A model generated the notes under the pieces. The model saw nothing but the letters and a program-made list of their open reading frames with translations, had not been told where the DNA came from and searched no databases. Of a stretch of 64,000 bases of DNA, positions 4,001 through 41,333 are shown piece by piece (the first letter of the stretch is position 1; each line of letters begins with the position of its first letter). The stretch is from positions 62,001-126,000 of IMG/VR virus record IMGVR_UViG_3300042895_001344. One strand, 5' to 3'. The position numbers and the translations under genes were made by a program.

Positions 4001-6309
4001 AATCCTGTTACACCTGAAGCTGGAATATTATATAATCCCGCACCATCACCAAAGAAGGCGGCAGTAATGTAACCACCATTTTCTATAATGATATTACTAC
4101 CACTATTTAAAACCATTGAACTACTATCAGTCAAATACAAGAAAGAATTAACCGCATTAGTACCTTGACTAACAGTTAATGAACCTGTAATAGATGTATC
4201 AGTATTAATATTAAATCCATCTAAATTAATTGAAGCAGTATTACTACCACTTGTGATTTGATTTAACTGTAAACCTGTTACTCCTGATGCTGGAATATTA
4301 ATTAAGTTTGAACCGTCTCCGTAGATATAGGCTCCACTTATTATTCCTCCATCTACATATATGTTTGAACCACTAGTAAGATAAAGCGATGAACTATCCG
4401 TCATTATGATATTACTATCTGTAATACCTAATTGAGAAGTTATACTTAAACTACCTGTAATTTCAATATCATTTGTTGTTGCCCATACTGAACCAGTAAG
4501 TGCAAATAAACTATCCCCTGAAGAACCATCTGATCCACTTGAACCTGAAGATCCTGATGTACCATCACTACCACTAGAACCTGAAGAACCATCCGATCCA
4601 CTAGAACCTGAAGATCCTGAAGAACCTGAAGAACCATCTGAACCAGAAGAACCTGATGTACCATCACTACCACTAGAACCTGAAGAACCATCTGATCCAC
4701 TTGAACCTGAAGATCCTGATGTACCATCACTACCACTTGAACCTGAAGAACCATCTGTTCCGTCAATTCCTGATATTCCTGAAGAACCTGAAGAACCATC
4801 TGAACCACTTGTACCGCTAGATCCGTTAGAACCTGATGTACCATCTGAACCACTTGTTCCTGAACTACCATTACTACCACTTGTACCATCGGAACCTGAT
4901 GTTCCTGAAGTCATCGCTGAGAATGAAACTCCGTCTATTATTAAACTACCACTTGAAATATTAACTGAACCACTGATAAACAATGAACCCGTAAACTCGT
5001 GCGTATCATCCGATGTATTACCAAATTTATTTGAACCTGATGTATAAAGAATTGAGGAACTTACATAATCAATATTTAATTGTTTTGCGGTAATAATACC
5101 ATCAACATTTAACGAACCTGTAATCTGTACGTCATTTGTTGTTGCCCAAAAAGATCCTGTTTGTGCAAATAAACTATCTCCTGATGTACCATCAGAACCA
5201 CTTGTACCGCTAGATCCGTTAGAACCTGATGTACCATCAGAACCACTTGTACCTGATGTACCATCTGTTCCGTCAACTCCACTTATACCACTAGAACCTG
5301 AAGAACCGTCTGATCCGTTAGAACCTGATGTACCATCTGAACCACTTGTACCATCAGAACCTGATGTACCATCTGAACCACTAGTTCCACTTGTTCCTGC
5401 GGTTCCCGCTGAACCTGAACCTCCACCACTTGTTTGACCACCAATTAATGAACCTGTGGTATCACTAATCTTAATGTAAATTGGTAGTGGATTTGTTGCC
5501 GGTTTTACATTCGTTACATAAGATGTATTTGATGCAGTTGCATCGTAATATAATATATCACCAATTGAAAATCCTGTTAATGTTAATCCCCCTTTGATTT
5601 CACCAAATGGTTTAACTGCCATGTTTCCATCTTCAGGTTCATTTACTGACGTAACAATACCAAAAGATTTTTCAACTTGAGTTGCGTTTGTTGTGTCAAC
5701 TAATTGAAATGTTCCTGTTGAATCTAAATAAACTATTTGATTAACACTATAACCTGTATTATAAACTAAATTAGTATCGTTATTGTTGTAATATGTTGTT
5801 GTTAAATTTCTATATTGAAATTTTGCATACATGTCATTAACAAAATAGTTAATGTCAGGTAAATAAGGTTGTAACAATTGTAATCCACTTAATATTGGAT
5901 CTCCGTCATCGGATAAATAAAATAATAATCCGTTATTACCTTCGCTAGGGGTATTAAAACCACTAAATGAAGTGTCGGATAATATATTATATAAACCAAC
6001 ATCTTTTAAAACAACATCAATTTCCGTTGCACTTGTTGGTGTTGATGTACTTATAATTTTATAAGATGCGCCGTTACTACTTTGACCAAACCACATTCCT
6101 TCATTTACAAAATATGCATCATACATAAATTGATTTGGTGTAATTCTATCGTCAGAAGTGAGTGTTGCGGTTACTTGTAATGTACAATTAAATGTATATC
6201 CATATCCATGGTAAGTACTTCCAGTATTATTATAAAATGTACTAGTAGTAATACTACCAGGTTTTATATTAGCAACTAATGTAATTGGTAATGATTCTAA
6301 TCTTGCCAT
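1081..6309 (-). CDS. 1742-aa modular fibre protein (Gly-X-Y Ser/Thr tracts, duplicated shaft modules, HNLG domain)
   Basis: Four GSS/GTS tracts; four copies of AK(Q/E)LxIxYVxSSxLYxSGSxKFGxTxDDxHxFTGS; five GDGxxLxNIPxSGxTxL modules; C-terminal DLGGF. Confidence 0.8.
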   Translation of the reverse strand: MARLESLPITLVANIKPGSITTSTFYNNTGSTYHGYGYTFNCTLQVTATLTSDDRITPNQFMYDAYFVNEGMWFGQSSNGASYKIISTSTPTSATEIDVVLKDVGLYNILSDTSFSGFNTPSEGNNGLLFYLSDDGDPILSGLQLLQPYLPDINYFVNDMYAKFQYRNLTTTYYNNNDTNLVYNTGYSVNQIVYLDSTGTFQLVDTTNATQVEKSFGIVTSVNEPEDGNMAVKPFGEIKGGLTLTGFSIGDILYYDATASNTSYVTNVKPATNPLPIYIKISDTTGSLIGGQTSGGGSGSAGTAGTSGTSGSDGTSGSDGTSGSDGTSGSNGSDGSSGSSGISGVDGTDGTSGTSGSDGTSGSNGSSGTSGSDGTSGDSLFAQTGSFWATTNDVQITGSLNVDGIITAKQLNIDYVSSSILYTSGSNKFGNTSDDTHEFTGSLFISGSVNISSGSLIIDGVSFSAMTSGTSGSDGTSGSNGSSGTSGSDGTSGSNGSSGTSGSDGSSGSSGISGIDGTDGSSGSSGSDGTSGSSGSSGSDGSSGSSGSDGTSGSSGSDGSSGSSGSSGSSGSDGSSGSSGSDGTSGSSGSSGSDGSSGDSLFALTGSVWATTNDIEITGSLSITSQLGITDSNIIMTDSSSLYLTSGSNIYVDGGIISGAYIYGDGSNLINIPASGVTGLQLNQITSGSNTASINLDGFNINTDTSITGSLTVSQGTNAVNSFLYLTDSSSMVLNSGSNIIIENGGYITAAFFGDGAGLYNIPASGVTGLELNKITSGSNTASVSLDGFNINTNTSITGSLIVSNGSGVFDSSLFLTDSSSLILTSGSNIIVENGGFVTAAFFGDGAGLYNIPASGVTNLALNQIVSGSVSASIQSDGTFRVNGDTYIDGILTAKQLNINYVTSSVLYTSGSNKFGNTSDDTHEFTGSVFISGSVNIVSGSLSIDGVSFSAMTSGTSGSDGTSGSSGSSGSDGTSGSSGSSGSSGSDGSSGSSGSSGSSGSDGSSGSSGSDGTSGSSGTSGSSGSDGTSGTSGSSGSNGSSGTSGSSGSDGTSGISGVDGTDGSSGTSGSSGSNGSSGTSGSDGSSGTSGSSGTAGTSGSDGSSGTAGTSGSDGTSGTSGSAGTSGSSGSDGTSGTSGSSGSDGTSGTSGTSGSDGTSGTSGTSGTSGSSGSDGTSGDSLFALTGSVWATTNDVEITGSLSITSQLGVVDANIIMTDSSSLYMTSGSNIYVDGGIISGAYIYGDGSNLINIPASGVTGLQLNLISSGSNTASIDLDGLHINTNTSITGSLYVDGILTAKELHIDYVTSSVLYTSGSTKFGDTLDDTHNFTGSVNITGSITLNGQAIGTGKLDESAFNTYTGSNTSQFAGTSSYAIYAENAVIVSGQTKTLNVSSASTTWSFNHNLGYKYPAINVFDASDKVVIPTEIEVIDSNNLKVYFNEAQTGTVIATVGGNGSSGTSGSSGSAGTSGTSGSSGTAGTSGTSGTSGTSGTSGSSGDSLFAETTPGTWTTTNDVEITGSLNITSQLGITDSNTIMTDSSSLYLTSGSNLHVFNGLVDLTNSDLEINTGDLTVNNGTISGSFTGDGAGLYNIPSSGITGLNLDRIVSGSVSASLADGKLKVNTDVVIDGTITAKELRIDYVTSSILYQSGSTKFGDTLDDKHDFTGSLRTTGSVIIDGDLTVRGTTTLTSTDPLRESLIISGAMAMMQAQIQSQIISASISMGGQNVITQEQNNIVLDLGGF
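2780..3450 (-). repeat. Longest Gly-X-Y (GSS/GTS/GSD) coding repeat tract, ~220 aa
   Basis: Glycine at every third residue; similar tracts at ~1820-1950, 4518-4910, 5180-5430, 6715-7150, 7560-7860. Confidence 0.9.
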
Positions 6310-6311
6310 TT

Positions 6312-8012
6312 TTATATATAAATATTATTTGTAGGTACTTGCCATGTTATGTATTGTACTACCGCACCCGTACCATATATACCAGTAAATCCTGTTCCTA
6401 ATGCCTTAAATGTCATTAAGGTTTTTGCTGCGTTTTGTACACAGACTGATTGGCCAGTTGATGTTCCTCCCATATTTCTACTTAAGAAATCTCCACCAAT
6501 AAGTTGTGAATGTGTCATAAAATTTATTCCCCATAGTCCTAATGGATGTGTTACACTTATTTCAGTTGCACTAACTCTTGTAAATGTCCAACCACCAGTA
6601 CCTGATGTTATAGTATTACCTAGTGGGTCGGTTGCCGCAGCAAAAGGACTCGCATCTAAACTACCTGCCGAATATGTTAATTTTAAAACATACACACCTC
6701 CACCACCCGCCGCCGATGTACCTGAAGAACCTGATGTACCCGATGTTCCCGTTGCACCACTTGTACCTGATGAACCCGCAGCACCTGAAGTACCACTAGA
6801 ACCATCAACACCTGATGTTCCCGATGATCCAGCAATACCTGAAGATCCACTAGATCCTGAAGTTCCCGAAGAACCTGTCGTTCCTGAACTACCATCTGAA
6901 CCACTTGTTCCTGAGGTACCCGATGAAAAACCTAAAGGTGATGTACCCGATGAACCTGAAGTTCCCGCACTACCTGATGTACCGTGTGAACCAGTTGCAC
7001 CCGTTGTACCCGATGTTCCACTTGAACCTGACGTTCCTGAAGTACCACTAGTTCCTGAAGTTCCGTCTGAACCTGATGTTCCACCACTTCCCGCAATACC
7101 TGATGTTCCACTTGATCCTGAAGAACCTGATGTACCACTTGTACCATTTGTACCTCCACCACCGCCACCAACTATAGTCACTCTAACATTACCCGCACCA
7201 ATATCTGTAACGGTTGCACCACTAAATATGATTTTATCTACTCCATTAATTAATGTTGATCCGTCACCGACTTTAAGTGTTGATGTTCCTCCTCCTTCTC
7301 CTCCACTTATTGAACTATATAAATTAATGGACCAACTATTGTGATCACTACCTCCTACATGTTCTAAAATTCTTATTATTAATTGTGTACCTGAATAACT
7401 TACAACACGTCCTATTAAATAATTTAATATATTACTTGCAGCAATTACAAGTTGACCCGTGGTATAAGATAAATTACTATCAACTGTGAAAGTAAGGTCT
7501 TCCCCATCGTGTTCGTCAATATCTGTAATGTATGTTGTTGATGATGTTTGATAAACATTTCCTGAAGTGCCTGATGTACCTGAAGTACCTCTTGCTCCCG
7601 ATGTACCCGAAGAACCACTTGTACCGTGATTACCCGCAATACCGCTTGTTCCTGAAGAACCACTAGATCCGTTTGATCCTGACGTTCCACTTATACCTGA
7701 AGATCCTGATGTTCCCGAAGTTCCTGAAGAACCTGTTAAACCTGAAGAACCACTTGTACCAGATGTACCACTAGTACCTCTTGCACCTGAAGATCCTGAA
7801 GATCCTGAAGATCCTGAAGTACCTGACAAACCTGAAGAACCTGATGTACCTGAAGATCCTGTGGTTAAATCAGTTAAACTTGTTCCTGAAACATATAAAT
7901 TATCTGCGTAGACCGCATTTAATGGAGTTGTGGATGAACCGAGATCAATTGTGGTACCTGGTGTGACGTTTTCCGTCTCAATCTGTGTCCAATTTATTCT
8001 TTGTAGTGCCAT
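6312..8012 (-). CDS. 566-aa fibre-like protein with two Gly-X-Y Ser/Thr tracts and a C-terminal globular (putative receptor-binding) domain
   Basis: GTSGSS tracts; beta-rich, Thr-rich flanks; adjacent to other fibre genes. Confidence 0.75.
   Translation of the reverse strand: MALQRINWTQIETENVTPGTTIDLGSSTTPLNAVYADNLYVSGTSLTDLTTGSSGTSGSSGLSGTSGSSGSSGSSGARGTSGTSGTSGSSGLTGSSGTSGTSGSSGISGTSGSNGSSGSSGTSGIAGNHGTSGSSGTSGARGTSGTSGTSGNVYQTSSTTYITDIDEHDGEDLTFTVDSNLSYTTGQLVIAASNILNYLIGRVVSYSGTQLIIRILEHVGGSDHNSWSINLYSSISGGEGGGTSTLKVGDGSTLINGVDKIIFSGATVTDIGAGNVRVTIVGGGGGGTNGTSGTSGSSGSSGTSGIAGSGGTSGSDGTSGTSGTSGTSGSSGTSGTTGATGSHGTSGSAGTSGSSGTSPLGFSSGTSGTSGSDGSSGTTGSSGTSGSSGSSGIAGSSGTSGVDGSSGTSGAAGSSGTSGATGTSGTSGSSGTSAAGGGGVYVLKLTYSAGSLDASPFAAATDPLGNTITSGTGGWTFTRVSATEISVTHPLGLWGINFMTHSQLIGGDFLSRNMGGTSTGQSVCVQNAAKTLMTFKALGTGFTGIYGTGAVVQYITWQVPTNNIYI
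6317..6324 (-). promoter_or_regulatory. TATTTATA candidate late promoter embedded in the last codons of the upstream gene
   Basis: 7 nt before ATG 6309. Confidence 0.5.
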
Positions 8013-27258: not shown

Positions 27259-27810
27259 TTAAAAGTTTGTATCTAAAATGTACACACCATCAATTAGGTT
27301 GTACACTTCAACATCTTCTCTTTTAAATGATCTCCATTCTTCAGGTTCACCTGTGGTAATCCATTTGGTTTGGAAATTTGCAACATGACATTTAGCGGGA
27401 TTTGCAAATGTTTCAGGTCTAATTAAAATAACCTGAGAAAAATCCACATTAGTTCTAATGTAAATATTTTTATCCCATCCTTGGTTTTTTTCGGGATTCC
27501 AATATTTGGATTTCCTCCACCAAGGGATGTTTACGGTTTTAAAACCTAAACCGCTTTTGTTATTGAGGCCCTTGTTTTCATCTGAGAAGAAATCACCAGT
27601 CCAATTTTTGGAATGTTCGATTTCTATTCCCCAAATAGGGTCTTCTTTGTACAATAAATCAATACCGTACTTATTTGGATTTGCAATCATTTCAAGTTCT
27701 AATGTTTCCATTGAGAATTTAATTATTGCATTTCTTGATGAGGAATCATCGAAACCTCCCGTGTTGTAGACTCTTGGTCTACCTGTAGCCATTGTTGACA
27801 TAAGATTCAT
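27259..27810 (-). CDS. Putative PD-(D/E)xK-fold nuclease
   Basis: NPNKYGIDLL...GIEIEH pattern. Confidence 0.5.
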   Translation of the reverse strand: MNLMSTMATGRPRVYNTGGFDDSSSRNAIIKFSMETLELEMIANPNKYGIDLLYKEDPIWGIEIEHSKNWTGDFFSDENKGLNNKSGLGFKTVNIPWWRKSKYWNPEKNQGWDKNIYIRTNVDFSQVILIRPETFANPAKCHVANFQTKWITTGEPEEWRSFKREDVEVYNLIDGVYILDTNF

Positions 27811-27897
27811 TTTTTTATATCATTTATTTATCATTTCTGATTATAATAAAGTATAAAGAAATTATCTCGTAAAAAAAAGTAAGTTGCCGGAAATATT

Positions 27898-30079: not shown

Positions 30080-31021
30080 CTAATCTATTTGTTTCATTTT
30101 ATATTCACTTAAGTTTCCCTGTAAATCGGCAATATCTTTATCCCCTTCTAATCTTATACTCCACACTTTCCCCATTAGTTTTCCACAATTCAATCTATGG
30201 TATAATCTTTCTTGATCATTCCACGCATCAGGATCTAGTACTATAACTATTTTTTTTGCATTATTGTAGAGTTTCATAAATAAATGTTCACTCATAAACT
30301 TTCCCAACATTGGAATTGCATTGGGAATAAAGATGCTATCAAACGCACCTTCCACAATGTATATTGGTTCATCCCAATTAATTAAATGCTCATTGAAAAT
30401 AATAATCTCCTTTTGTGCTTCGGGGTTCATGTATTTTCTCTTTGTCTTTTGTAAATAAGAACGAGCAATGAAATACGTTAATCTTTTATTCTCATCATAG
30501 GATGGAATTATAATTCTACTCTCATATGGTCCACTATAACAAAATCCAATATTATAAATTTGTAACATCAAATCAGTGATGTTTCTTTTTTTAATGTAAT
30601 TGTATGCCTGCTTGTATTGTGGGGTCATCTTTAAACCCATACTAGCATCTTTAAATGGAATAAACTCTTTAGGTAATTTTACAGGTTTGTATGTTCTTGC
30701 AGCAATCTCCTCATCATCTTCAGGTTTTAATAAAAGATATTTCTTTAATTGTTTTGGATTACCAAACTTCTTAATTAACTTATAGATTGATCCGTGGGTA
30801 TTATGTGTCTCAGCACATACCCAACATTTATAAACACCATATTTGTAATTGATTTCAAGGTTTCCCTTACCGTCTCCTTTATCTAATCCTTTAATTTCAT
30901 GTGAACACACAGGACAATCAAAGGACACTTGGTACCTATAATCATTATGATTTTTATAGTCACCAAATATATCTTCTAAAATATCAAATACGGCAGAATA
31001 GTCTACTTCTTGGGTGTTCAT
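30080..31021 (-). CDS. DNA primase (zinc finger plus TOPRIM)
   Basis: CPVC/CWVC, RIIIPSYD, IVEGAFD, LDPD, DIAD; start MNTQEV at 31021. Confidence 0.88.
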   Translation of the reverse strand: MNTQEVDYSAVFDILEDIFGDYKNHNDYRYQVSFDCPVCSHEIKGLDKGDGKGNLEINYKYGVYKCWVCAETHNTHGSIYKLIKKFGNPKQLKKYLLLKPEDDEEIAARTYKPVKLPKEFIPFKDASMGLKMTPQYKQAYNYIKKRNITDLMLQIYNIGFCYSGPYESRIIIPSYDENKRLTYFIARSYLQKTKRKYMNPEAQKEIIIFNEHLINWDEPIYIVEGAFDSIFIPNAIPMLGKFMSEHLFMKLYNNAKKIVIVLDPDAWNDQERLYHRLNCGKLMGKVWSIRLEGDKDIADLQGNLSEYKMKQID

Positions 31022-31048
31022 GATTATAATATAATAAAAAAGTATGAT

Positions 31049-31084
31049 AAAAAAAAATGGGAGCCGGACACCACGCCGACTCCC
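31049..31084 (-). terminator. Strong intrinsic terminator
   Basis: 9-bp GC stem with one G-U pair on the minus strand, followed by A and T9. Confidence 0.8.
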
Positions 31085-31120
31085 TCCAACCAAACTTGTA
31101 TTTCTACAAGTCCCGTCCTA
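31049..31120 (-). ncRNA. Candidate ~75-nt structured small RNA (GAAA-tetraloop hairpin plus terminator hairpin)
   Basis: GC-rich island: ACUUGUA-GAAA-UACAAGU and GGGAGUCGG-N8-CCGGCUCCC-A-U9; preceded by TATTTATA at 31122-31129. Confidence 0.5.
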
Positions 31121-31173
31121 ATATAAATATATCTTTTACAGCTCGTAAAGTAAAACTTTAGTTGCCGAATATT

Positions 31174-31782
31174 TTAAGATGTTTGTTTGTTCATGTTAAC
31201 ATAACCAATAACGCAACATGCCGCATCGGCCATGTCATAATTTTCTTTTTTAAGATTACCCGTTTTACCGTATAACCAATTGATATCAGGACATACATTA
31301 TTAACGTGTTCCCAAATGACGTGTTTCTTATCAATATCTCTTGGGTATCCACCAAATAAAACGTTACGTCCTTTATCATTTGGACCAACCAAATCAGGGA
31401 AAGCAAATTTTCTTGAGTTATACGTGGAAATAAATGTTGGTAATACTCCTAGCACATCATAACAGTTCTTAAGTATCAATGTATTATAACGTAATAATGT
31501 TCCTATAGTATAAATGTTATTTGACTGCAACAATGGTTCTTCAATAATAACACGAAGAATTCCCATGTCTTTATAACTTTCCAAATGTTTTTTAAATGCG
31601 TCGGCCTTTTTAATTAATTCCTCAATCTTATCTTCTGGTTGTGGTTTAATTTTTGGTGAAAAATGTGTTAGTTCTAATAATTTAGAACCCGTCATATCAA
31701 ATAAAGCAAAGCCGATCGTCTTCGTGGAAATATCAAGACCGAGAATCTTTGGTTTGTTTTTGAAATTAATATCTATACTCAT
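31174..31782 (-). CDS. RuvC-like Holliday junction resolvase
   Basis: ILGLDIST, IEEP, DMADA acidic residues of the RNase H fold. Confidence 0.8.
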   Translation of the reverse strand: MSIDINFKNKPKILGLDISTKTIGFALFDMTGSKLLELTHFSPKIKPQPEDKIEELIKKADAFKKHLESYKDMGILRVIIEEPLLQSNNIYTIGTLLRYNTLILKNCYDVLGVLPTFISTYNSRKFAFPDLVGPNDKGRNVLFGGYPRDIDKKHVIWEHVNNVCPDINWLYGKTGNLKKENYDMADAACCVIGYVNMNKQTS

Positions 31783-31821: not shown

Positions 31822-33936
31822 TTAGAAATCTAATTTAATTGCGAAAACTTGAGTTCCTGTTCTTTTAATTGGTGTAGATGTTTTAGCAATCACTAACGGT
31901 TCTTTTAATGAATCTAATAATGCGACTTCGGTAATATATGTGGGAGTTGTTCCGGTTGTTGGATATGTTGGGTTTTGTGATGTTAAGAATTGAGTAGATG
32001 GTAAGTTTATTAACATATTCATTTCTTCAATATCGGTTGCTCTTACTAATCTAATACTGCCAGGGAACGGTTGTTCGTCACCAAATTGTGGTTGTGTTGT
32101 TGATCCCGTTGTATTCCACAAATAATCAGTTGTTACATCTGACATATGGTCTTCTAAATCAAAAGACGTTCCACCAGTGTAATCACTTTTTGTAATTGTA
32201 AACGTATAGTTAACCAAATTTGTTGGATCAATATATCCACTAGTATATCCTGATATCTTTGATGTTATATCAATTTTTATCCATTTGGAAGTAGTTGGTG
32301 TTGTTCCTGTTTGTACTAAGGCGTAAAATTTATTAGCAATAAATCCGTCTTTAATACCGCTTGGGGTAGTGTACATATTTGGAAATGCTCCTGTATTAAA
32401 TTTAAATGTTAATTGTGAAGGGGTTCCGTTCCCTGTTATTTTATTAAAATAATTGCATGGTAATGCATTTAATGTAGATCCACTAGTACTTGTATCTCCA
32501 AACATATATGTAAACCAAACAGTATCTCCTGTGGTTGGTAGTAAGGAATTAATTGCCGTTCCGTCACTTGGTACCGATCCCAATTTAGGTGATGGTAATG
32601 TATATCGTCTATTAGATCTATAATCTAACATCGCCACCAACTCTTGATCGTCGAATACAACTATTTTGTTATTAATAAAAACTTTACCTACTTTATTAGT
32701 TTGTTCGTCTAACAAATATCTAAATTTTAATTCAAATCTAGACCCTGTTGTTCCTGAAAATGGTTTAATGTAATAATCAACAGTGTCCATTGTAAATAAC
32801 GCACCTAATGTTATTCCTGTATTTCTATGATAATTAATAAATGGTATGTAAATTTCAAAATAGTCACTATCAGTTTTATTATAGTCTCTATCATCTGTAT
32901 CTAAATCACCAAATAATGTAATACTTTCACCTGTAGTTCCCGTTAATGAACTTATATAATCATCATATTTAAAAAATCTTTCAGGATCATTTGTAACATC
33001 TCCAAGTTCAGAATAATGTATAATTGCAATACACCTTTGTTCTGACGGTAAAACTTCAACTAATTCATCGAATGAATTTTTAAATGTAGTTCCTGTTATA
33101 GTTGTTCCTACAAAATTTGTAAATGTTTGTCCTGATTTTGTATATCCTAATAATTGTTTTGTTGAAACATATTGATTACTATTATAACCACTTAAACTTT
33201 CATCTAAATCATTTGTTGGGTAATCTGCCCCGATTGGTTTGTCCGACCATACTGTATTTAATCTCCATGAATTAAGTTGTTGTGTATAATCAATTGGGTT
33301 AAATATGTCAGTTGTTGGTGATTCGTCGAAATATTCATTTAATACTACTTGTACATTACCTGTTAGTCCTGTTAAATTAGGGAGTTTACGATCTAGTGTT
33401 AATGTATTATCTGTTTTTGATACTACCTTATAGATCATACTATTTGTTTGTCCCGTAATTGTTGTACTTGAAAAACCATCTAAAACTACTGTTATAAAAT
33501 CATTTGGTTTAAAATTCGTACCATCCACCACAACCAGACTTGTTGTTCCACTTAGTTTACTATATGTTAATGGTTGTGGTGTTGTTTTTACTGTTGGTGC
33601 GGTTGAATACATAGATACAAATCCAGCACTACCCATTTCATTTCTTAAAGTTGTAGTTGAACTATTACTAATTGGTGTTCCGTATGTTGTTGAAGTTAGG
33701 GTATCACTACCTAAAGAATACGGATATTTAACACCTGATTCATTATCAAATGGAGCAAAAACTTTTTGTTGTCCTGTTGTTCCTGTTAAACCACTAAAAA
33801 TTGTATCGTAATCAAATTCAGAATCTCCTATTTGAAAGAATTCAATATTGAAAGTACCTTTGGCAATAGCCTTTCTACCCTCGTTTGTTATTCGGGCCGT
33901 TAAATATTCCGCGTGATTACTGTTTAAAAAACTCAT
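31822..33936 (-). CDS. Virion tail/baseplate structural protein
   Basis: ITNEGRKAIA...FQIGD N-terminus and ITEVALLD...IAK...PIKR C-terminus typical of tail-collar/baseplate proteins; TATTTATA at 33941-33948. Confidence 0.7.
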   Translation of the reverse strand: MSFLNSNHAEYLTARITNEGRKAIAKGTFNIEFFQIGDSEFDYDTIFSGLTGTTGQQKVFAPFDNESGVKYPYSLGSDTLTSTTYGTPISNSSTTTLRNEMGSAGFVSMYSTAPTVKTTPQPLTYSKLSGTTSLVVVDGTNFKPNDFITVVLDGFSSTTITGQTNSMIYKVVSKTDNTLTLDRKLPNLTGLTGNVQVVLNEYFDESPTTDIFNPIDYTQQLNSWRLNTVWSDKPIGADYPTNDLDESLSGYNSNQYVSTKQLLGYTKSGQTFTNFVGTTITGTTFKNSFDELVEVLPSEQRCIAIIHYSELGDVTNDPERFFKYDDYISSLTGTTGESITLFGDLDTDDRDYNKTDSDYFEIYIPFINYHRNTGITLGALFTMDTVDYYIKPFSGTTGSRFELKFRYLLDEQTNKVGKVFINNKIVVFDDQELVAMLDYRSNRRYTLPSPKLGSVPSDGTAINSLLPTTGDTVWFTYMFGDTSTSGSTLNALPCNYFNKITGNGTPSQLTFKFNTGAFPNMYTTPSGIKDGFIANKFYALVQTGTTPTTSKWIKIDITSKISGYTSGYIDPTNLVNYTFTITKSDYTGGTSFDLEDHMSDVTTDYLWNTTGSTTQPQFGDEQPFPGSIRLVRATDIEEMNMLINLPSTQFLTSQNPTYPTTGTTPTYITEVALLDSLKEPLVIAKTSTPIKRTGTQVFAIKLDF

Positions 33937-33961
33937 ATGTTATAAATATCTTTATTTTATT

Positions 33962-35281
33962 TTAATCACAAGGACAAGTTACGTTTGTAAATGATGAGAA
34001 GTATATTGCTGATGGATAGTTTGTTGCCATATAAGCACTATCTTTATTCGTGTCTATTCTTGAACAACATTCACTATTTATCGTCACAAAACTTAAATTA
34101 CCCGCACTATAATCTACATAATATATTGCTGTTAAATCACATCTCTCATACACATCATATGTTTGCGGTGTAGGAGTTGGTGGTAAAGGGGTTGAAGTTG
34201 GTGGTGCTCCTGAACAAGCTGTACAAGCTGTTTGTGCTGTTCCTGTTTGTGCCGAACCATCTCTCATAAATTCTCTTTCATCCGTACCATCAGAAACCCA
34301 AAACGTGTCATTAACTATCATATCACCATATACGTTACCATACATTGTGGAAGATAAACCTTTTACTTTTGTTAAATTACATAAAGACGTACCTACAACC
34401 GTAATATTAACATTACTATATTCACCACCAGTACATGCTGTTGGTCCGTTAACTAAACTAACATAACCACTAAACGTAGTTTCAAATGGAGTTGGTTGTG
34501 GTGTTGCAGTTGCCGGTAAAGGAGTTGGTGTTGTAGGACAACTACAAGATGTTGCACTATAATTTATAAATGAAATAGTTGCACCAACTTGGGATAATGA
34601 ACCATATTGCAAACAATCGTTTATTACTTGTGGTCCAATACCAAATGTTAAATAAATTGTCTCACCGCAACAATCAATATATCTAATATCACCAGCACTA
34701 TCAACTTCAAATCCTACAGATATTACACACTCAGGTGTTGGGGTTGGGGTTACAGTTGCCGGTAATGGGGTTACAGTTGCCGGTAATGGGGTTACAGTTG
34801 CTGGTAATGGGGTTACAGTTGCTGGTAATGGGGTTACAGTTGCTGGTAATGGGGTTACTGTTGCCGGTAATGGTGTTACTGTTGGTGTATTTGTGGGAGT
34901 TGCCGTTGGTACAACTGTTGGTGTGGGAGTTGGTGTGGGAGTTGGTGTAGTCGGCATTCTTATTGTTAAATTATTATAATCAACACATTCAACACATATA
35001 ACAGGGTCACCATCTTTTCCATTAAATTCTGATGGTACCACTCTAATTGTTTTTATTCCCTCCGGAACAACTACATATGTACCATTTAAACTTGATCTTG
35101 GAATATTGGAATATCCAACTAAAGGAAAATATTTTGACGAGTCAGATCCTGAAAGGGATCCTGTACATAAAGATCCTGAATTATTAGTACAATCATCTAA
35201 ACTACCTGTACAAGCATATAAATCAACATTTAATATTGATACACCTAAAGTAAATCCTGTTAATCGTATTGTATATGACAT
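33962..35281 (-). CDS. Cys-rich modular surface protein with Pro/Thr linkers
   Basis: Cys-rich modules separated by TPTP/PLPATVT repeats; TATTTATA at 35287-35294. Confidence 0.75.
   Translation of the reverse strand: MSYTIRLTGFTLGVSILNVDLYACTGSLDDCTNNSGSLCTGSLSGSDSSKYFPLVGYSNIPRSSLNGTYVVVPEGIKTIRVVPSEFNGKDGDPVICVECVDYNNLTIRMPTTPTPTPTPTPTVVPTATPTNTPTVTPLPATVTPLPATVTPLPATVTPLPATVTPLPATVTPLPATVTPTPTPECVISVGFEVDSAGDIRYIDCCGETIYLTFGIGPQVINDCLQYGSLSQVGATISFINYSATSCSCPTTPTPLPATATPQPTPFETTFSGYVSLVNGPTACTGGEYSNVNITVVGTSLCNLTKVKGLSSTMYGNVYGDMIVNDTFWVSDGTDEREFMRDGSAQTGTAQTACTACSGAPPTSTPLPPTPTPQTYDVYERCDLTAIYYVDYSAGNLSFVTINSECCSRIDTNKDSAYMATNYPSAIYFSSFTNVTCPCD
34746..34875 (-). repeat. 21-nt tandem repeat encoding (PLPATVT) x6
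   Basis: ggggttacagttgc(c/t)ggtaat units. Confidence 0.9.
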
Positions 35282-35969: not shown

Positions 35970-38900
35970 TTAAGGTGCTTCTGCACAGAATGATTTATTG
36001 GATACTATTCCGGTATACGAAATGTTTCCTGAATATGGTGTGGCTCCTACACTATTTAAAGAAAACGCATGTGTTTCGTTCTCACCAGTATAAGTAGTTA
36101 CTAAATTAGGATCTAAAAAGAATTGTTCTACATTAAATGGTTGATCTGCTGTTGCATATACTGTAGTGTAGAAATCCATACCGAAATTATCACAAGCCAT
36201 ACTCGATGATGTATAAGATGGTCCTAATTGATAAGCATATGATGTTGCAGGTGGTGGTGTATTAGTTGGTGTTGGTGTTGCCTCCTCCGGTACAGGTGTT
36301 GCTGTTGCTGGTAATGGTGTTGCGGGTATTGGTGTTGCTGTTGCTGGTAATGGTGTCGCCGTTGCCGGTACAGGTGTTGCCGTTGCAGGTAATGGCGTTG
36401 GTGTTGGACAACTTACACAACCCTCTTGTGGATAAGCTCTATTTGTTGATCCCGATTTTTGATAATATCTTGATTGTCCGAATCCTTCACTTAACCAAAA
36501 ATACCCGTTTGGATCGATTTCTGCTTGAATAATACCACCTTCTATATAACTATTTGCGTCACACATTGTTCCATAAAATCCATTAAATTGGTATGCAAAA
36601 TATGGTGTAAAACTTCCACCATTACATGCATCATAACCACTATCTAAACTAATATAAGCGGTAAACGATGTTGCAGGTATTGGTGTTGCTGTTGCTGGTA
36701 ATGGTGTCACAGTTGCTGGTAATGGTGTCACAGTTGCTGGTAATGGTGTCACAGTTGCTGGTAATGGTGTTGGTGTATTAGTTGCAGGTTGAGCACATAA
36801 TGAACTACAACTTGTAACACCTAATGCAAACATAGTTGTTAATAAAGCAATCTGTGGAGTTGTTGAATTAACGACCTGAAATATATAACCTGTTTCAGGG
36901 TCTAATCTAAACCTTGCGTTTAACACTAATTCTATATCATTAGCAATAACAATAGTTTCAACATATTCACAACTACCATTTTGTAAACATTGATATCTAT
37001 CCGCCTCATAATAGAAATTAGGGTCAGGTGTTGGTGTTACTGTTGGTACATTAGTTGGTATATTGGTTGGTATATTGGTTGGTATATTGGTTGGTACGTT
37101 AGTTGGTATATTGGTTGGTTCTGGTGTATTAGTTGGAACCGCCGTTGGTATTGCCGTTGGTACGTTAGTTGGTACATTAGTTGGTATATTGGTTGGTATA
37201 TTGGTTGGTACTGCTGTTGGTACGTTAGTTGGTAATGGTGTTGGTGTGCTGTAGATAACATCAACATCAACATTAAAGTTACAATCTGGCGTTGGAGTTG
37301 GAGTTGGTGTTGTAGTGTTAGTAGGTGTTGGGGTTGGTGTATTTGTTGCTGGTAATGGTGTAGGGGTTGGTGTATTTGTTGCGGATTCCGGTAATGGTGT
37401 TGGAGTATTTGTATTTGTTGGTGTAGGAGTTGGTGTACTATAGATAACATCAACATCAACATTAAAATTACAATCTGGTGTTGGAGTTGCGGTATTTGTT
37501 GGTGTTGGAGTTGCGGTATTTGTTGGTGTTGGAGTTGGGGTACTATAGATAACATCAACATCAACATTAAAATTACAATCTGGTGTTGGTGTAGGTGTTG
37601 CAGTGTTAGTAGGTGTAGGAGTTGGTGTACTATATACGACTAAGACATCAACATTAAAGTTACAATCTGGTGTTGGGGTTGGTGTTGCAGTGGATGTTGG
37701 GGTTGGTGTTGGGGTACTATAAAATATTTCTACGTCAACAGCAAACTCACAATTTGGTGTGGCTGTTGGGGTTGGTGTTGGAGTTGGAGTGCTAGTAACA
37801 ACTAAAACATCGACTAAGAAATTACAATTTGGTGTTGGGGTTGGAGTAGGTGTTGGGGTGCTAGTAACAACTAAAACATCGACTAAGAAATTACAATTTG
37901 GTGTTGGGGTTGGAGTAGGTGTATTTGTTGCAGGTGATGCAGTTACTGTTGGTGTTGGGGTGGAAGGTAATGGTGTTGCAGTTGCAGGTAATGGTGTTGG
38001 TGTTGGTGAAGGAGTTGTGGTAGGTGTTGCGGTTGGTGTTGGTGTGTTTGTTGGAGTTGGTGTTGGTCCTGGCTCATATATCGCTAATCCTCCACTAAAT
38101 CTACAATCTTTTACATCATTTTGACCAATTGACACATATCCATAATCTAAATAATTTTTTACTGTACAATCATTTGGGCCATATTTGTAAGACGTAAATT
38201 TAATTTTTTCACGTCCTTCATTATCTATGAAAATTTCATATGATAGTATTTTTTGTTTTGTTGTTCCCGTAATTGATGAATTACCAATTTCAGTTCCATA
38301 TTGTGTATTTTTACCTTCTCCATCTATAGTTGATCCAGAATAGGTGTTAATATATGTAATTGTATTTTGTATCGCCCTTTTCCACAATATTTTTAATTGT
38401 GTGTCGTATGATAAATCATTATAATCTACAAGATCATTAGTGGTACCTCCACTATATAAATTAATACTAACACCATCCGTTGTTATAGTATTGTCATTAT
38501 TAATTATTGTTGTTCCAGTTAATGAGGTGGCACCACTTATTAAAACATATGTACATCCCGTTACATTTGTATTCCAAGTATCTGTCTTCCAAGTACCTGT
38601 AGTTTCATAAAGACGAGTATATATTGTACCTGATGTTGGATTACTTGTATTATTGTTTGAACTTTTTAATACTCTAAAATTAATACTTTCTGAATCGTAA
38701 ATAGTATGGGTTGAACCAGATGATATAATTTCATCAAACGAATCTTTATTTAATGCAGATATATTACCTGGATCTGTCATACCAGAATAAACTTTACCGT
38801 CAATTTCAAATACCGGATAAAGTTTAACATAACCGTCAAATTTCGTTTCTCCAGATTCATCATTTTCAATACTAAATCCAAGCTCATTGTCCGCCTGTTT

Positions 38901-41333
38901 TATTAAATAACCAAAATAACTTGTATATCCTGTTGGTATTTCTAAATCAAAATTAATATGGTCTTCCGTTTCTGTAGGTTGGCATCCATATCTATATTGA
39001 TATTTTGATCTACCAAAAATATTATTTGAAATTAAATTACCTCCAGTCCATAAAGTTGTTGCAGGAATAATTTGATCAATAACACTTGTCCAATAAGGAC
39101 TCATTTTTTCAATAAACAAATTAACATCGGGAAAACTATATGGTGTGAAATCTGTATGTGATATGTAATCTTGATAGATGTCCTCTAATGTAATATAATT
39201 CTTCTTATATTTTATTAAATTAGAATTTTTAATTTGTTGATGTATCATTAAATCAACATACTCAGCAAATGTTACTCCTGTTTGTGGTGTTAAACTATTT
39301 GTACCGAATGTTGTACCTGTTGTACCAAAGTCTCTTGATTTACGATATATGTCATAATCAACCGCTTGTGCTGACGATAAATAAACTTCAATATTTTTTC
39401 TATTTAATAATAAACCAGAATTATCATTAAGATTTTCTGTTTGATTGTTATCGATAATATTTTTTAATTTATATCCTGAGTCTAATCCTGGCAATTTTCT
39501 ATAAACGTCAAAATAATCTTCACCATATGTGTATGCACTATTTTTAGTAACAATATTTTTAGTTCTTCCTGTTACCGTTGAATTATCGATATCAATCACT
39601 AATGGTGATTTATGATCTGTAGTATTATCATACCAACCAGATCCTTTTTGGAAAAAATATTCTGTTGATCCCGTAATTCCTTTAGGTAATAACGTATCTC
39701 CATTAACGGGATAATTTTCAGAATTAAATGTTGTTGTACCTGTAGTTATACCAGTATAATATCTATATGGAAGATATGTTACACCATTAATAGTTCCACC
39801 TGTTGGTAAGAATATTCCTGTTTTGTAAATTTTAGTTCCCGATATAACATCATAAATGTCACCTTTTAAATCAAATGATTTAGGTAAAGATATTACCTTG
39901 TAAACGTATTGATTAATTTTAATCATTGGTTCGGGTGCACCTAAAAATCTTAAAAAGAATTCTAAAGATTGTCTTGTACCTTTTGATTTATAAATGTAAG
40001 CCAAGTTAACTAACAACCTTCTATAAAATTCATATTCGGCATCTATTAAAGACGTTCCCGATACTAATCCAGAATATTGTTGTGATGTCTTAGTGTATAA
40101 TAATTCATCTAAACCTTTCTCATCAATTAAGTTAATTGTATCTAATCCTAAAGTATTCGCTAAATTCTTTAACAATACATCGGGTACGTTATTAATACCG
40201 TCATAACTTACATTTCTCATGTAAGCAATATTATCAATATATTTTTTTACACTATCAAAACTTTGTCCATATAATTGAAATAATGATTCGGCCTTTTTAT
40301 CGGGACTATCAAATTCAAACAATTGAGGTGATGTTAAAAACCTAACAAATAAGTTAGATTTATAATCATCAATTTCATCTGCTATGTTACTTAAATTTGT
40401 TAAATAACTATCATATTCTAAACCTGTAATTTTAATGTTCCAATCTTCCTTATCGGATAACGGCCAACTATAATTTACTGAAATTAATTCGGTTTTTGTT
40501 TCATCAAAACTATCTCTTGGAACTTTGAAACTTGAGGTGTACTTTGGAAAACTATCTCTATTTAATAAACTTTCCTCTAAATCATCTAAACCTTTAAAGA
40601 ACTCTTCAATAACACCATCATTTGGTTTAATTAATATATTTTCAGAAAACCCCGTTAAGTTACCAAATGGTTTACCACTTACCTTTAATGAAATTATATT
40701 ATCACTATTAGGTTCAATATATGAAATTACATCATAGGTTTTTCCACTTATTGAAATTAAATAATTTTTAAAAGAAGTGTAAAAATCTCTGTTTTTATTA
40801 ATTGAAGGTAATATGGTATTACTTTTCGGTGTGACCATAACAATCGAAAATGGATTGTATAGTTTACTATATTCAACTTGAAACTGAGTGGTATTACTTA
40901 TATTATCGTATGTAATATTATTAGCGGTAAAATTCGTTACTTTAATTAAACTATTAGAATCAATCAAAATAGCCGCCGGAAAATTATTAATTATATTAGT
41001 TGTCGCAACACCTAGTCTACTTTTTAATGATCCAAATAAAGATTTAGCGGCATCATTTTTAGAACCTTTAAATTTTATTTCTTTATTTTTACTTGCGGTA
41101 CCACTCGTAGTTGTACTTGAAGTTTGTCCTTTTAAATCATCTAATGTTAAAAAATTAGAAAACGGATTTGTTTTAAAATTCTTTGTATCTCTTTGTATTA
41201 CCTCACTATCTAACGCAAAGTTCGTATTAGTCAACTGACCGGTACCCGTGGTAATTTGATTACCAACTAGGTTGTCACTGAATGTATCGGCACCACTTGC
41301 AGCTTGACTTGGAATTTTACGTAATTTTGCCAT
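35970..41333 (-). CDS. 1787-aa baseplate/tail protein with mucin-like C-terminal region
   Basis: [25 protein letters not shown] resembles baseplate wedge/tail protein I motifs; C-terminal ~700 aa of PT repeats and Cys modules. Confidence 0.75.
36240..38070 (-). repeat. Pro/Thr-rich coding repeats including seven CxFxVDVxVxxS units, PTNI/V units and PLPATVT units
   Basis: Identical ~63-nt copies at 37791 and 37860; 12-nt units at 37040-37232. Confidence 0.9.

What the first reader, a model, noticed from the sequence alone, without database searches (positions are those of the whole stretch)
31049..31149. Self-contained small structured RNA between the RuvC-like gene and primase
Seen: a GC-rich island in an AT-rich genome, minus strand UAGGACGGGACUUGUA-GAAA-UACAAGUUUGGUUGGA-GGGAGUCGG-CGUGGUGU-CCGGCUCCC-AUUUUUUUUU. 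Hairpin 1 has a GNRA tetraloop and extends through G-U pairs that form only on the minus strand. Hairpin 2 plus U9 is a terminator. Immediately upstream is TATTTATA (31122-31129), which elsewhere precedes genes, but no ORF follows here, and primase has its own promoter-like element after the terminator. Inference: a ~75-nt phage sRNA (regulator, protein sponge with four GGA motifs, or replication-associated RNA) that does not resemble any family I recognise.
Basis: partly seen in the sequence, partly recalled or inferred. Interest (0 to 1): 0.65.

Follow-up and report, generated by a model that had tools for sequence, protein, structure and literature searches.

The report
New small RNA gene beside phage primase
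An uncultured freshwater jumbo phage and about 75 relatives carry, just upstream of their primase gene, a conserved two-hairpin RNA of about 65 nt with its own promoter-like box and terminator; it matches no known RNA family and its partner is unknown.

Summary
On the minus strand, window 31117-31049 holds a long hairpin with a GAAA loop, a GG linker, then a GC-rich hairpin followed by U9.

It is a real, selected RNA structure:
- A covariance model finds it once in the 64-kb window (90.5 bits; next best 14.8).
- It occurs in 76 related viral contigs, always directly 5' of primase, and in no bacterial genome.
- Across 48 distinct sequences, 96.6% of base-pair cells are paired. There are 218 double-sided compensatory cells against 59.5 in shuffles.
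- Three blocks never change: the wobble-rich base of hairpin 1, the linker GUUGG, and the terminator loop GUGGUG.

A promoter-like unit lies upstream. It is GGCAAC, then TTTTAC, then an 18-nt spacer of fixed length and variable sequence, then TATATTTAT. It stays with the RNA even where a different gene lies upstream.

No alternative antiterminator fold exists. Rfam and ARAGORN find nothing.

Best reading: a stand-alone phage small RNA that acts in trans through its invariant G/U-rich surfaces. The partner is unknown. No transcript data exist.

The parts
31150..31166 (-). Upstream conserved box: GGCAAC (31166-31161), then TTTTAC (31155-31150). This is the -35-like or regulator-binding part of the putative promoter.
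   Evidence: Conserved across 27 diverse relatives, whether the bases are coding (C-terminus of RuvC-like) or non-coding. It is retained when the upstream gene is a UDP-glucose dehydrogenase instead. A second intergenic copy lies at 27869-27889.
31123..31131 (-). TATATTTAT box, -10/-7-like. It lies 18 nt after TTTTAC and 5-7 nt before the conserved 5' end of the RNA.
   Evidence: T-A-T..T are invariant in alignment A2. The spacer to TTTTAC has fixed length and variable sequence. The same TATTTAT motif lies 5-25 nt before 11-13 start codons in the window, 26 on the minus strand against 8 on the plus strand.
31088..31117 (-). Hairpin 1 (P1). The base is invariant and wobble-rich: GAC.GGGA pairs with UUU.R.GUU through three G-U pairs and a G/R mismatch. 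The upper stem is variable. The loop is GAAA at 31104-31101.
   Evidence: The upper 5-6 pairs all show double-sided compensatory changes. The base is 98.8% paired but almost invariant. The loop is GNRA (GAAA, GCAA or GUAA) in about two thirds of distinct sequences and an A-rich 6-8-nt loop in the rest.
31085..31087 (-). Unpaired linker GG(A/U), the 3' part of the invariant GUUGG block.
   Evidence: GUUGG is invariant or nearly so in 47 of 48 distinct sequences.
31059..31084 (-). Hairpin 2 (P2), the intrinsic terminator stem. Its 8-nt loop (31075-31068) contains the invariant GUGGUG(U).
   Evidence: All 9 pairs show compensatory changes, including complete strand flips (GGGAG/CUCCC to UCCCU/GGGGA). 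The loop core never changes. It is the best terminator hit in the region.
31049..31057 (-). U9 tract, the termination point and 3' end of the RNA.
   Evidence: There are 6-9 U in all family members.
31023..31048 (-). Spacer holding the primase gene's own promoter-like box: TATATT at 31033-31028 and TATAAT at 31028-31023. The primase ATG is at 31021.
   Evidence: A TATATT-type box 5-11 nt before the ATG is conserved in the relatives. This implies a very short or absent primase leader, which is an inference.

Best explanation
This is a stand-alone small-RNA gene specific to one clade of uncultured AT-rich jumbo phages, whose host is probably in the Bacteroidota.

How it is made (inferred): transcription starts a few nucleotides after the TATATTTAT box, near window 31118-31114. 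It stops at the U9 tract, near 31052. The product is an RNA of about 62-68 nt.

How it folds (shown): two independent hairpins. The variable stems act as scaffolds. They display three invariant G/U-rich surfaces: the wobble-rich base of hairpin 1, the GG linker, and the GUGGUG loop on the terminator hairpin.

How it works (inferred): the invariant surfaces are recognition sites for a trans partner. That partner is either a C/A-rich RNA bound by base pairing or an RNA-binding protein. The RNA would then be a riboregulator or decoy made during infection. Hairpin 2 also terminates the upstream operon.

Shown: the structure, strand specificity, invariant blocks, single copy, fixed genomic position and phage-only distribution.
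Inferred: the start site, the discrete transcript, action in trans, and the nature of the partner.
For: Structure:
- MFE z = -4.27.
- RNAalifold finds compensatory changes at 13 of 18 pairs.
- On the covariance-model alignment of 85 hits (48 distinct), 96.6% of cells are paired. There are 218 double-sided cells against 59.5 +/- 6.2 in shuffles (0 of 500 reach it). Controls with partners slid by 1-3 columns reach at most 58.6% paired.

Strand:
- Conserved G-U pairs exist only on the minus strand. Minus folds to -31.1 and plus to -19 kcal/mol.

Invariant loop and base:
- Both stay fixed while the stems turn over completely.

Promoter-like unit:
- Two conserved blocks are separated by an 18-nt spacer of fixed length and variable sequence.
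- The same TATTTAT motif precedes 11-13 genes, with a 26:8 strand bias.
- The unit travels with the RNA when a UDP-glucose dehydrogenase gene lies between RuvC-like and it.

Constitutive terminator:
- No conserved alternative pairing appears when the 3' strand of P2 is withheld.

Primase independence:
- Primase has its own conserved promoter-like box after the terminator.

Distribution:
- 76 of 78 strict-pattern hits in viral contigs are true members, all 5' of primase.
- There is one copy per 64-kb window.
- None of the 58 pattern hits in 185,579 bacterial and archaeal genomes is a true member.
- The nearest cultured relative, Flavobacterium phage immuto, has only a plain terminator at this position.
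Against: - There is no transcript evidence of any kind, so the start site and the RNA's discreteness are inferred.
- No target was found. No conserved complementary site exists within +/-3 kb in 26 relatives.
- No site in the 64-kb window matches both conserved blocks at once.
- Complementarity to the primase 5' end is not conserved.
- The strict adjacency to primase in every genome could point to a cis role instead.
- The invariant blocks could in principle be constrained at the DNA level, for example as a regulator binding site.
- The upstream operon has no other terminator, so part of the conservation simply serves termination.
Confidence: 0.5

Rival explanations
1. It is a purely cis-acting 3'-end module. 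Hairpin 2 plus the U-run terminates the upstream operon (the 704-aa gene and RuvC-like, or the UDP-glucose dehydrogenase gene). It also insulates the primase/replication operon. Hairpin 1 and the conserved loop would protect the 3' end or assist termination through a factor such as NusA or a phage protein. No independent RNA would be made.
For: No other terminator lies between the promoter-like box at 33948 and this element. Terminator-then-promoter modules are the rule in this genome, for example at 35342-35317, 27256-27215 and about 8085. The related Flavobacterium phage has a plain terminator at the same place.
Against: Other terminators in the window have A/U-rich, unconserved loops and no upstream hairpin. 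An invariant loop, an invariant wobble-rich helix base, and a conserved promoter-like block with a length-fixed spacer directly upstream are not needed for termination.
Confidence: 0.2
2. It is a conditional attenuator, or leader, of the primase operon. Transcripts from the upstream promoter normally stop at U9. A trans factor that recognises the base of hairpin 1 and the terminator loop would allow read-through into primase and the genes after it.
For: The element is locked to the 5' side of primase in all 76 contigs, 27-60 nt from the ATG, and nothing is ever inserted between them. Primase heads a tightly packed operon of primase, exonuclease, SbcD and SbcC.
Against: No conserved antiterminator or alternative fold exists. 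The U-tract is long and P2 is very stable. Primase keeps its own promoter-like box 5-11 nt before the ATG. Rfam finds no riboswitch or leader family.
Confidence: 0.12
3. It is an anti-defence or host-takeover decoy RNA. It would mimic or sequester a host nucleic acid or protein. Examples are an RNA anti-CRISPR-like repeat mimic, or an RNA that pairs with tRNA 3' ends or with rRNA.
For: The RNA is phage-only, single-copy, has invariant display surfaces, and shows no target within the phage sequence examined. The invariant GACGGG and UGGUGU are complementary to directly adjacent 16S rRNA segments 1402-1407 and 1408-1413 in E. coli rrsH.
Against: The 16S match was found after trying several other ideas; I estimate its chance probability at about 0.01. 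In mature 30S subunits these bases are largely paired (established knowledge). From memory, Bacteroidota 16S differs at positions 1409-1410. No host CRISPR repeats are available for comparison.
Confidence: 0.08
4. It is a replication element. It would be either a primer or R-loop-forming origin transcript, or a single-strand DNA hairpin signal for the adjacent primase.
For: It sits next to primase at the head of the replication/recombination module. The transcript is G-rich, and an AT-rich stretch follows it.
Against: There are no iterons or repeats in 30700-31500. GC skew shows no switch at 31 kb. The rU:dA end of a terminated transcript makes a poor primer. Conserved G-U (G-T) pairs and the U-run fit RNA better than a DNA hairpin.
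Confidence: 0.05
5. It is a CsrA/RsmA-type protein sponge that uses its four GGA motifs.
For: Four GGA triplets occur in the window's copy.
Against: Only GGGA in the base of hairpin 1 is conserved, and it is paired there. AGGAC becomes AAGAC or UAGAC in about a third of distinct sequences. UGGAG becomes UGGUAG or UGGUU. GGGAG lies in the covarying P2 stem and disappears. From established knowledge, Bacteroidota lack CsrA.
Confidence: 0.02

Closest known systems
Phage- and prophage-encoded trans-acting small RNAs with their own promoter and an intrinsic terminator (for example DicF and IpeX, anti-sRNAs of EHEC prophages, and phage T4 band C/D RNAs). These examples come from my own knowledge and were not retrieved here.
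   Same: Short size (about 65 nt). A promoter-like box lies directly upstream and a Rho-independent terminator forms the 3' hairpin. The recognition segments are conserved while the stems vary. The RNA is encoded between protein genes on the same strand.
   Different: There is no sequence or structure match to any Rfam family. The conserved surfaces are G/U-rich and include the terminator loop itself. The host lineage is probably Bacteroidota, where Hfq and ProQ are absent (established knowledge). No target has been identified.
3'-UTR-derived sRNAs that have an internal promoter and share the terminator of the upstream mRNA (the type exemplified by DapZ and MicL; from my own knowledge).
   Same: The element shares its terminator with the upstream operon and has a promoter-like box just after that operon's stop codon. 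In some relatives the GGCAAC box lies inside the upstream coding sequence.
   Different: The upstream gene is interchangeable: RuvC-like in some relatives, UDP-glucose dehydrogenase in others. The RNA is therefore not tied to one mRNA. It is tied to the downstream primase position.
HK022 put RNA and lambda nut/boxB antitermination RNAs (from my own knowledge).
   Same: They are two-hairpin or GNRA-like-loop RNA elements placed just after a phage promoter and ahead of an operon.
   Different: Here the second hairpin is itself a strong terminator with U9. The GNRA loop is replaceable. No boxA-like element or read-through design is present, and no alternative fold exists.
The plain intrinsic terminator at the same position in Flavobacterium phage vB_FspM_immuto (MW353175).
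   Same: Same synteny: a terminator directly upstream of a DnaG-type primase that is followed by an exonuclease.
   Different: That phage has no hairpin 1, no GUGGUG loop and no GGCAAC/TATATTTAT unit. The covariance model scores at most 14.9 bits there. The family studied here looks like an elaboration of such a terminator into an RNA gene.

Membership tests
Intrinsic (Rho-independent) terminator | A GC-rich stem-loop immediately followed by a U-tract on the transcribed strand | tested here: met
   A 9-bp stem with 7 GC pairs, followed by A and U9. The stem covaries at all 9 pairs and there are 6-9 U in all members.
Stand-alone trans-acting bacterial or phage sRNA | Own promoter and a discrete primary transcript | tested here: inconclusive
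   A conserved promoter-like block with a length-fixed 18-nt spacer lies 5-7 nt before the conserved RNA 5' end. No transcript data can be obtained with these tools.
Stand-alone trans-acting bacterial or phage sRNA | A conserved accessible seed with a complementary site in target RNAs | tested here: inconclusive
   Invariant accessible blocks exist. No conserved target was found in the window or in +/-3 kb of 26 relatives. Only 64 kb of a genome of about 217-335 kb was available, and no host genome.
Riboswitch or transcription attenuator | Mutually exclusive terminator and antiterminator folds, and a match to a known aptamer class | tested here: not met
   When the 3' strand of P2 is withheld, its 5' strand stays unpaired in all 48 sequences and in the alignment fold. 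No Rfam hit appears at E <= 10.
CsrB/RsmZ-type CsrA sponge | Multiple conserved GGA motifs displayed in loops or single strands | tested here: not met
   Three of the four GGA motifs vary or lie in covarying stems.
Any Rfam 15 family (including T-box, c-di-GMP-I, small ribozymes, 6S and phage motifs) | A covariance-model score at or near the gathering threshold | tested here: not met
   Nothing overlaps hairpin 1 or the core at E <= 10. The only overlap is frnS at 16.2 bits against a threshold of 60. The whole window gives 0 hits at gathering scores.
tRNA, tmRNA or tRNA-like gene | A cloverleaf or tRNA-like domain detectable by ARAGORN | tested here: not met
   0 genes in the window.
Origin-of-replication primer RNA (ColE1 RNA II, or T7/T4 origin promoters) | Iterons or an unwinding element, a skew switch, and a persistent RNA-DNA hybrid | tested here: not met
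   No repeats and no GC-skew inflection at 31 kb. Hybrid formation cannot be tested here.
RNA anti-CRISPR (solitary repeat mimic) | Sequence and structure similarity to the CRISPR repeat of the host's system | not testable with these tools
   The host and its CRISPR repeats are unknown. No match to repeats recalled from memory, which is a lead only.
RNA-guided RuvC nuclease guide (omega RNA or crRNA of TnpB/Cas12-like proteins) | An adjacent large RuvC-domain effector, with the RNA overlapping or abutting its 3' end | tested here: not met
   The RuvC-like ORF is a 202-aa resolvase-type protein with D17, E81/82, D183 and D186. The 704-aa neighbour is beta-rich with only weak phage-tail fold hits. 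The RNA separates from RuvC-like in some lineages.

The most novel reading that the evidence does not exclude
The RNA is a phage-made antisense decoy aimed at a universal host RNA rather than at an mRNA. Its two invariant blocks, GACGGG and UGGUGU, are exact complements of the directly adjacent 16S rRNA segments 1402-1407 and 1408-1413, the decoding-centre strand at the top of helix 44 (E. coli rrsH). The block at the base of hairpin 1 is held in a deliberately weak, all-wobble helix that could open. Such an RNA could bind nascent or immature 16S rRNA, or alternatively tRNA 3' CACCA ends through UGGUG. This would reprogramme or block host ribosome production during infection by a phage whose own mRNAs appear nearly leaderless.
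Probability: 0.04. Interest if true: 0.9.

Novelty: new member of a known kind. Interest (0 to 1): 0.5.

Why it matters
Few phage small RNAs are known, and nearly all come from coliphages and Hfq-dependent hosts. As far as I know, none has been described for jumbo phages of Bacteroidota-like hosts.

This family has unusually clean comparative support. There are 48 distinct sequences, every variable pair covaries, and three blocks are invariant. The design is also unusual, because the terminator loop itself is the most conserved feature.

The family gives a concrete, testable candidate for RNA-based regulation or host takeover in an abundant but uncultured group of freshwater phages. It also provides anchor points for defining this group's promoters: the TATTTAT box and the GGCAAC box.

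The limits are that the function is unknown and that no cultured host exists.

Tried and rejected
1. Near-identical cultured phage: megablast of 2.5 kb against 50,697 phage records found nothing.
2. Known RNA family: Rfam scans at E <= 10 and at gathering thresholds found nothing. ARAGORN found nothing.
Only 4 of the 80 listed were real. A stricter pattern worked.
4. Bacterial or archaeal copies: all 58 pattern hits were rejected by the covariance model, at 18.5 bits or less.
5. Loop complementarity to the primase 5' end (ACACC at codons 2-4): present in this phage but not conserved.
6. Whole-RNA duplex scan of the window: dominated by C/A-rich proline/threonine-type coding repeats at 34.9 and 36.2-38.1 kb, so uninformative.
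7. Seed searches near start codons, and a search for one site matching both conserved blocks: nothing convincing.
8. Antiterminator or alternative fold: none.
9. Origin features: no repeats and no skew switch.
10. RNA-guided nuclease context: the 704-aa neighbour has no family or PDB sequence match. Its AlphaFold model is poor (pLDDT 57) and gives only weak phage-tail fold hits.
11. Ideas considered from memory and dropped as unsupported: T-box-like UGGN contact, Chi-like GGTGG, T7-primase GTC sites, Cas12a/Cas13b repeat mimicry, ANTAR dual hexaloops, and a two-tier G-quadruplex (incompatible with the covarying P2 stem).
12. Literature search on jumbo phage, Flavobacterium and small RNA: nothing relevant.

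Full report
**Observation.**
It folds into two hairpins at -31.1 kcal/mol. The z-score is -4.27 against 200 dinucleotide shuffles, and none of them folds as well. The plus strand reaches only -19 kcal/mol.
- Hairpin 1 (31117-31088) has a 3-bp base, a 1x1 G/G mismatch, nine more pairs and a GAAA loop.
- A GGA linker follows.
- Hairpin 2 (31084-31059) has a 9-bp GC-rich stem and the 8-nt loop CGUGGUGU. It is followed by A and U9 (31057-31049).
- It is the top terminator-like site in 22-41.5 kb.
- Local GC is 0.41-0.48 in a 32% GC window.

**Genomic context.**
All long ORFs in the window lie on the minus strand, and none has a Shine-Dalgarno sequence.
- The upstream ORF, 31174-31782, is a 202-aa RuvC/RNase H-fold resolvase-like protein (PHROG 159, E = 3e-6). 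D17, E81/E82, D183 and D186 are invariant in 17 homologues.
- The downstream ORF is a DnaG-type primase (PHROG 47, E = 1e-39; Pfam DNAG_N). It starts at the ATG at 31021.
- The TTG-extended ORF in the ORF list is an artefact. Relatives conserve the ATG start, and the spacer length varies by non-multiples of three.
- Primase heads a packed operon of primase, exonuclease, SbcD-like and SbcC-like genes.
- No cultured phage is close at the DNA level. The best protein match for primase is Flavobacterium phage immuto at 35% identity.
- Identical or related primases lie on IMG/VR contigs of up to 335 kb. This is therefore an uncultured jumbo phage. Its host is probably in the Bacteroidota, an inference from the missing Shine-Dalgarno sequences, the promoter-box style and the nearest relative.

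**The element is a conserved family.**
- Of 80 loci recovered through primase, the 75 with at least 62% primase identity carry the element at the same place. The five most distant (51-54%) do not.
- A search that did not depend on primase used a strict DNA pattern in viral contigs and gave 78 hits. Of these, 76 are true members by covariance model, and all lie between an upstream gene and primase. The other two are GC-rich chance matches.
- The same pattern in 185,579 bacterial and archaeal genomes gave 58 hits. None is a true member; all score 18.5 bits or less, against 54-96 bits for nearly all members (34 for the most divergent).
- The window holds exactly one copy, at 90.5 bits; the next best hit scores 14.8.
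- Rfam 15 has no match, and ARAGORN finds no tRNA or tmRNA.

**Structure is under selection.**
- RNAalifold on 35 distinct sequences recovers both hairpins, with compensatory changes at 13 of 18 pairs.
- On the model-based alignment (85 hits, 48 distinct rows), 96.6% of cells are paired, against 70.7% in shuffles.
- There are 218 cells changed on both sides, against 59.5 +/- 6.2 in shuffles. None of 500 shuffles reaches the observed value.
- Controls with partners slid by 1-3 columns fall to 34-59% paired.
- Every pair of the upper part of hairpin 1 and all nine pairs of hairpin 2 show compensatory changes. Some lineages have swapped the G-rich and C-rich strands of hairpin 2 entirely.
- Conserved G-U pairs make the fold specific to the transcribed (minus) strand.

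**What does not vary is more informative.**
Three blocks are invariant or nearly so across the 48 distinct sequences.
- The base of hairpin 1: GAC.GGGA pairs with UUU.R.GUU through three G-U wobbles and a G/R mismatch.
- The following GG: together with the preceding GUU it forms GUUGG.
- The core of the terminator loop: GUGGUG(U).
The hairpin 1 loop is replaceable. It is GAAA, GCAA or GUAA in about two thirds of distinct sequences and an A-rich loop of 6-8 nt in the rest. An ordinary terminator needs none of these conserved features. Other terminators in this window have A/U-rich loops and no companion hairpin.

**Promoter-like unit.**
Upstream lie GGCAAC(T), then about 5 nt, then TTTTAC, then an 18-nt spacer, then TATATTTAT. 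The conserved RNA 5' block starts 5-7 nt further on. In 27 diverse relatives the spacer keeps its length while its sequence diverges freely, which is the signature of a two-box promoter.
- TATTTAT occurs 26 times on the minus strand and 8 times on the plus strand.
- Eleven to thirteen minus-strand copies lie 5-25 nt before a start codon. The genes concerned include two collagen-like tail-fibre genes.
- A second intergenic GGCAACT...TTTTTTAC box lies before ORF 27259-27810 and is conserved in relatives.
- In the L032 and L052 lineages a 274-aa UDP-glucose dehydrogenase-like gene sits between RuvC-like and the element. The whole unit, GGCAAC box included, stays next to primase.
The element is therefore not simply the 3' UTR of the RuvC-like mRNA.

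**The terminator looks constitutive.**
When the 3' strand of hairpin 2 is withheld, its 5' strand stays unpaired and hairpin 1 is unchanged. This holds in all 48 sequences and in the alignment fold. Primase keeps its own TATATT-type box 5-11 nt before the ATG. A riboswitch or attenuator design is therefore not supported.

**Interpretation.**
The best-supported reading is a stand-alone small-RNA gene. It produces a transcript of about 62-68 nt, and its covarying stems display invariant G/U-rich surfaces to a trans partner. Hairpin 2 also terminates the upstream operon. I put this at about 0.5.
The rivals are:
- a purely cis 3'-end and insulator module (0.2);
- a factor-dependent attenuator of the primase operon (0.12);
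- an anti-defence or host-RNA decoy (0.08);
- a replication element (0.05);

**Search for a partner.**
- Complementarity of the loop to primase codons 2-4 exists in this phage but is not conserved.
- Seed searches, and a search for one site matching both conserved blocks, found nothing convincing in the window or in +/-3 kb of 26 relatives.
- Whole-RNA duplex scans only pick up C/A-rich coding repeats.
- No origin features are present.
- The 704-aa neighbour is not a recognisable RNA-guided nuclease.
- One curiosity: GACGGG and UGGUGU are exact complements of the adjacent 16S rRNA segments 1402-1407 and 1408-1413 in E. coli rrsH. I found this after testing several other ideas and estimate its chance probability at about 0.01. 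It is offered only as the most novel reading not excluded (probability about 0.04).

**Comparison and novelty.**
The element works like the known class of phage or prophage small RNAs that have their own promoter and an intrinsic terminator. It also resembles 3'-UTR sRNAs with internal promoters. It belongs to no described family.
At the same position, Flavobacterium phage immuto has only a plain terminator. The family therefore looks like a terminator that was elaborated into an RNA gene within one jumbo-phage clade.
I rate it a new member of a known kind, interest 0.5. The comparative evidence is very clean and the conserved terminator loop is unusual. However, there is no expression data, no target and no cultured host.

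Noticed in passing
window, minus strand: 51025, 42262, 35946, 35294, 33948, 21990, 19322, 17074, 15422, 8039, 6324, 53362 (upper coordinate of each TATTTAT): TATTTAT, often as AAAGA(TA)TATTTAT, lies 5-25 nt before 11-13 start codons, with 26 minus-strand copies against 8 plus-strand copies. Several copies sit only 5-8 nt from the ATG. If the motif is a -10/-7 box, many mRNAs would be leaderless or nearly so. The genes concerned include two tail-fibre genes, so it may be a late-type promoter.
   Followed up: partly
window 27869-27897 (-); relatives at about locus position 6115-6134: A second copy of the AATATTYCGGCAACT...TTTTTTAC(G) box lies directly after a TAA stop and ahead of a 183-aa ORF of unknown function (27259-27810). 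It is conserved in many relatives. Together with the copy upstream of the RNA, these are the only two intergenic copies in 64 kb. It may be a shared regulator or sigma-factor site.
   Followed up: partly
whole window: No Shine-Dalgarno sequence precedes any of 54 ORFs, and all genes lie on one strand. The nearest cultured relative of the primase is a Flavobacterium phage at 35% identity. Related contigs reach 335 kb. This points to an uncultured jumbo phage of a Bacteroidota-like host.
   Followed up: partly
L032 2008-2832 and L052 2021-2845; L032 677-1402: Some relatives carry a 274-aa UDP-glucose dehydrogenase-like gene between RuvC-like and the RNA unit. L032 also has a GIY-YIG/NUMOD3 homing endonuclease upstream of RuvC-like.
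   Followed up: yes
window 34754-34948 and 36250-38063 (-): There are dense C/A-rich coding repeats. ACACCAAC proline/threonine-type repeats occur in ORF 35970-41333 (1787 aa). A 21-nt periodic CGGCAACT/CAGCAACT repeat occurs in ORF 33962-35281. They produce spurious complementarity to any G/U-rich RNA.
   Followed up: partly
window 31822-33936 (-): This 704-aa ORF has no Pfam, PHROG, NCBIfam or PDB sequence match. Its AlphaFold model is beta-rich and poor (pLDDT 57, pTM 0.63), and Foldseek gives only weak phage-tail hits. It is probably a virion protein.
   Followed up: partly
window 1081-6309 and 6312-8012 (-): Two adjacent giant collagen-like tail-fibre genes of 1742 and 566 aa.
   Followed up: no
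window 30080-31093 (-): The mechanical ORF list extends primase upstream to a TTG at 31093, through the terminator. Comparison with relatives shows that the real start is the ATG at 31021.
   Followed up: yes
window 31112-31117 and 31068-31073 (-), compared with L331 (E. coli rrsH) 16S positions 1402-1413: The invariant GACGGG and UGGUGU are exact complements of the adjacent 16S rRNA hexamers CCCGUC and ACACCA. Each of these occurs only once in that 16S. The match was found post hoc and its significance is uncertain.
   Followed up: partly
window 35342-35317, 27256-27215, about 8085-8060, about 22012-21995 (-): Terminator hairpins are followed within 0-25 nt by a TATTTAT or TATAAT-type box and then a gene start. 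The genome appears to be built from short units, each a terminator followed by a promoter and a gene.
   Followed up: no
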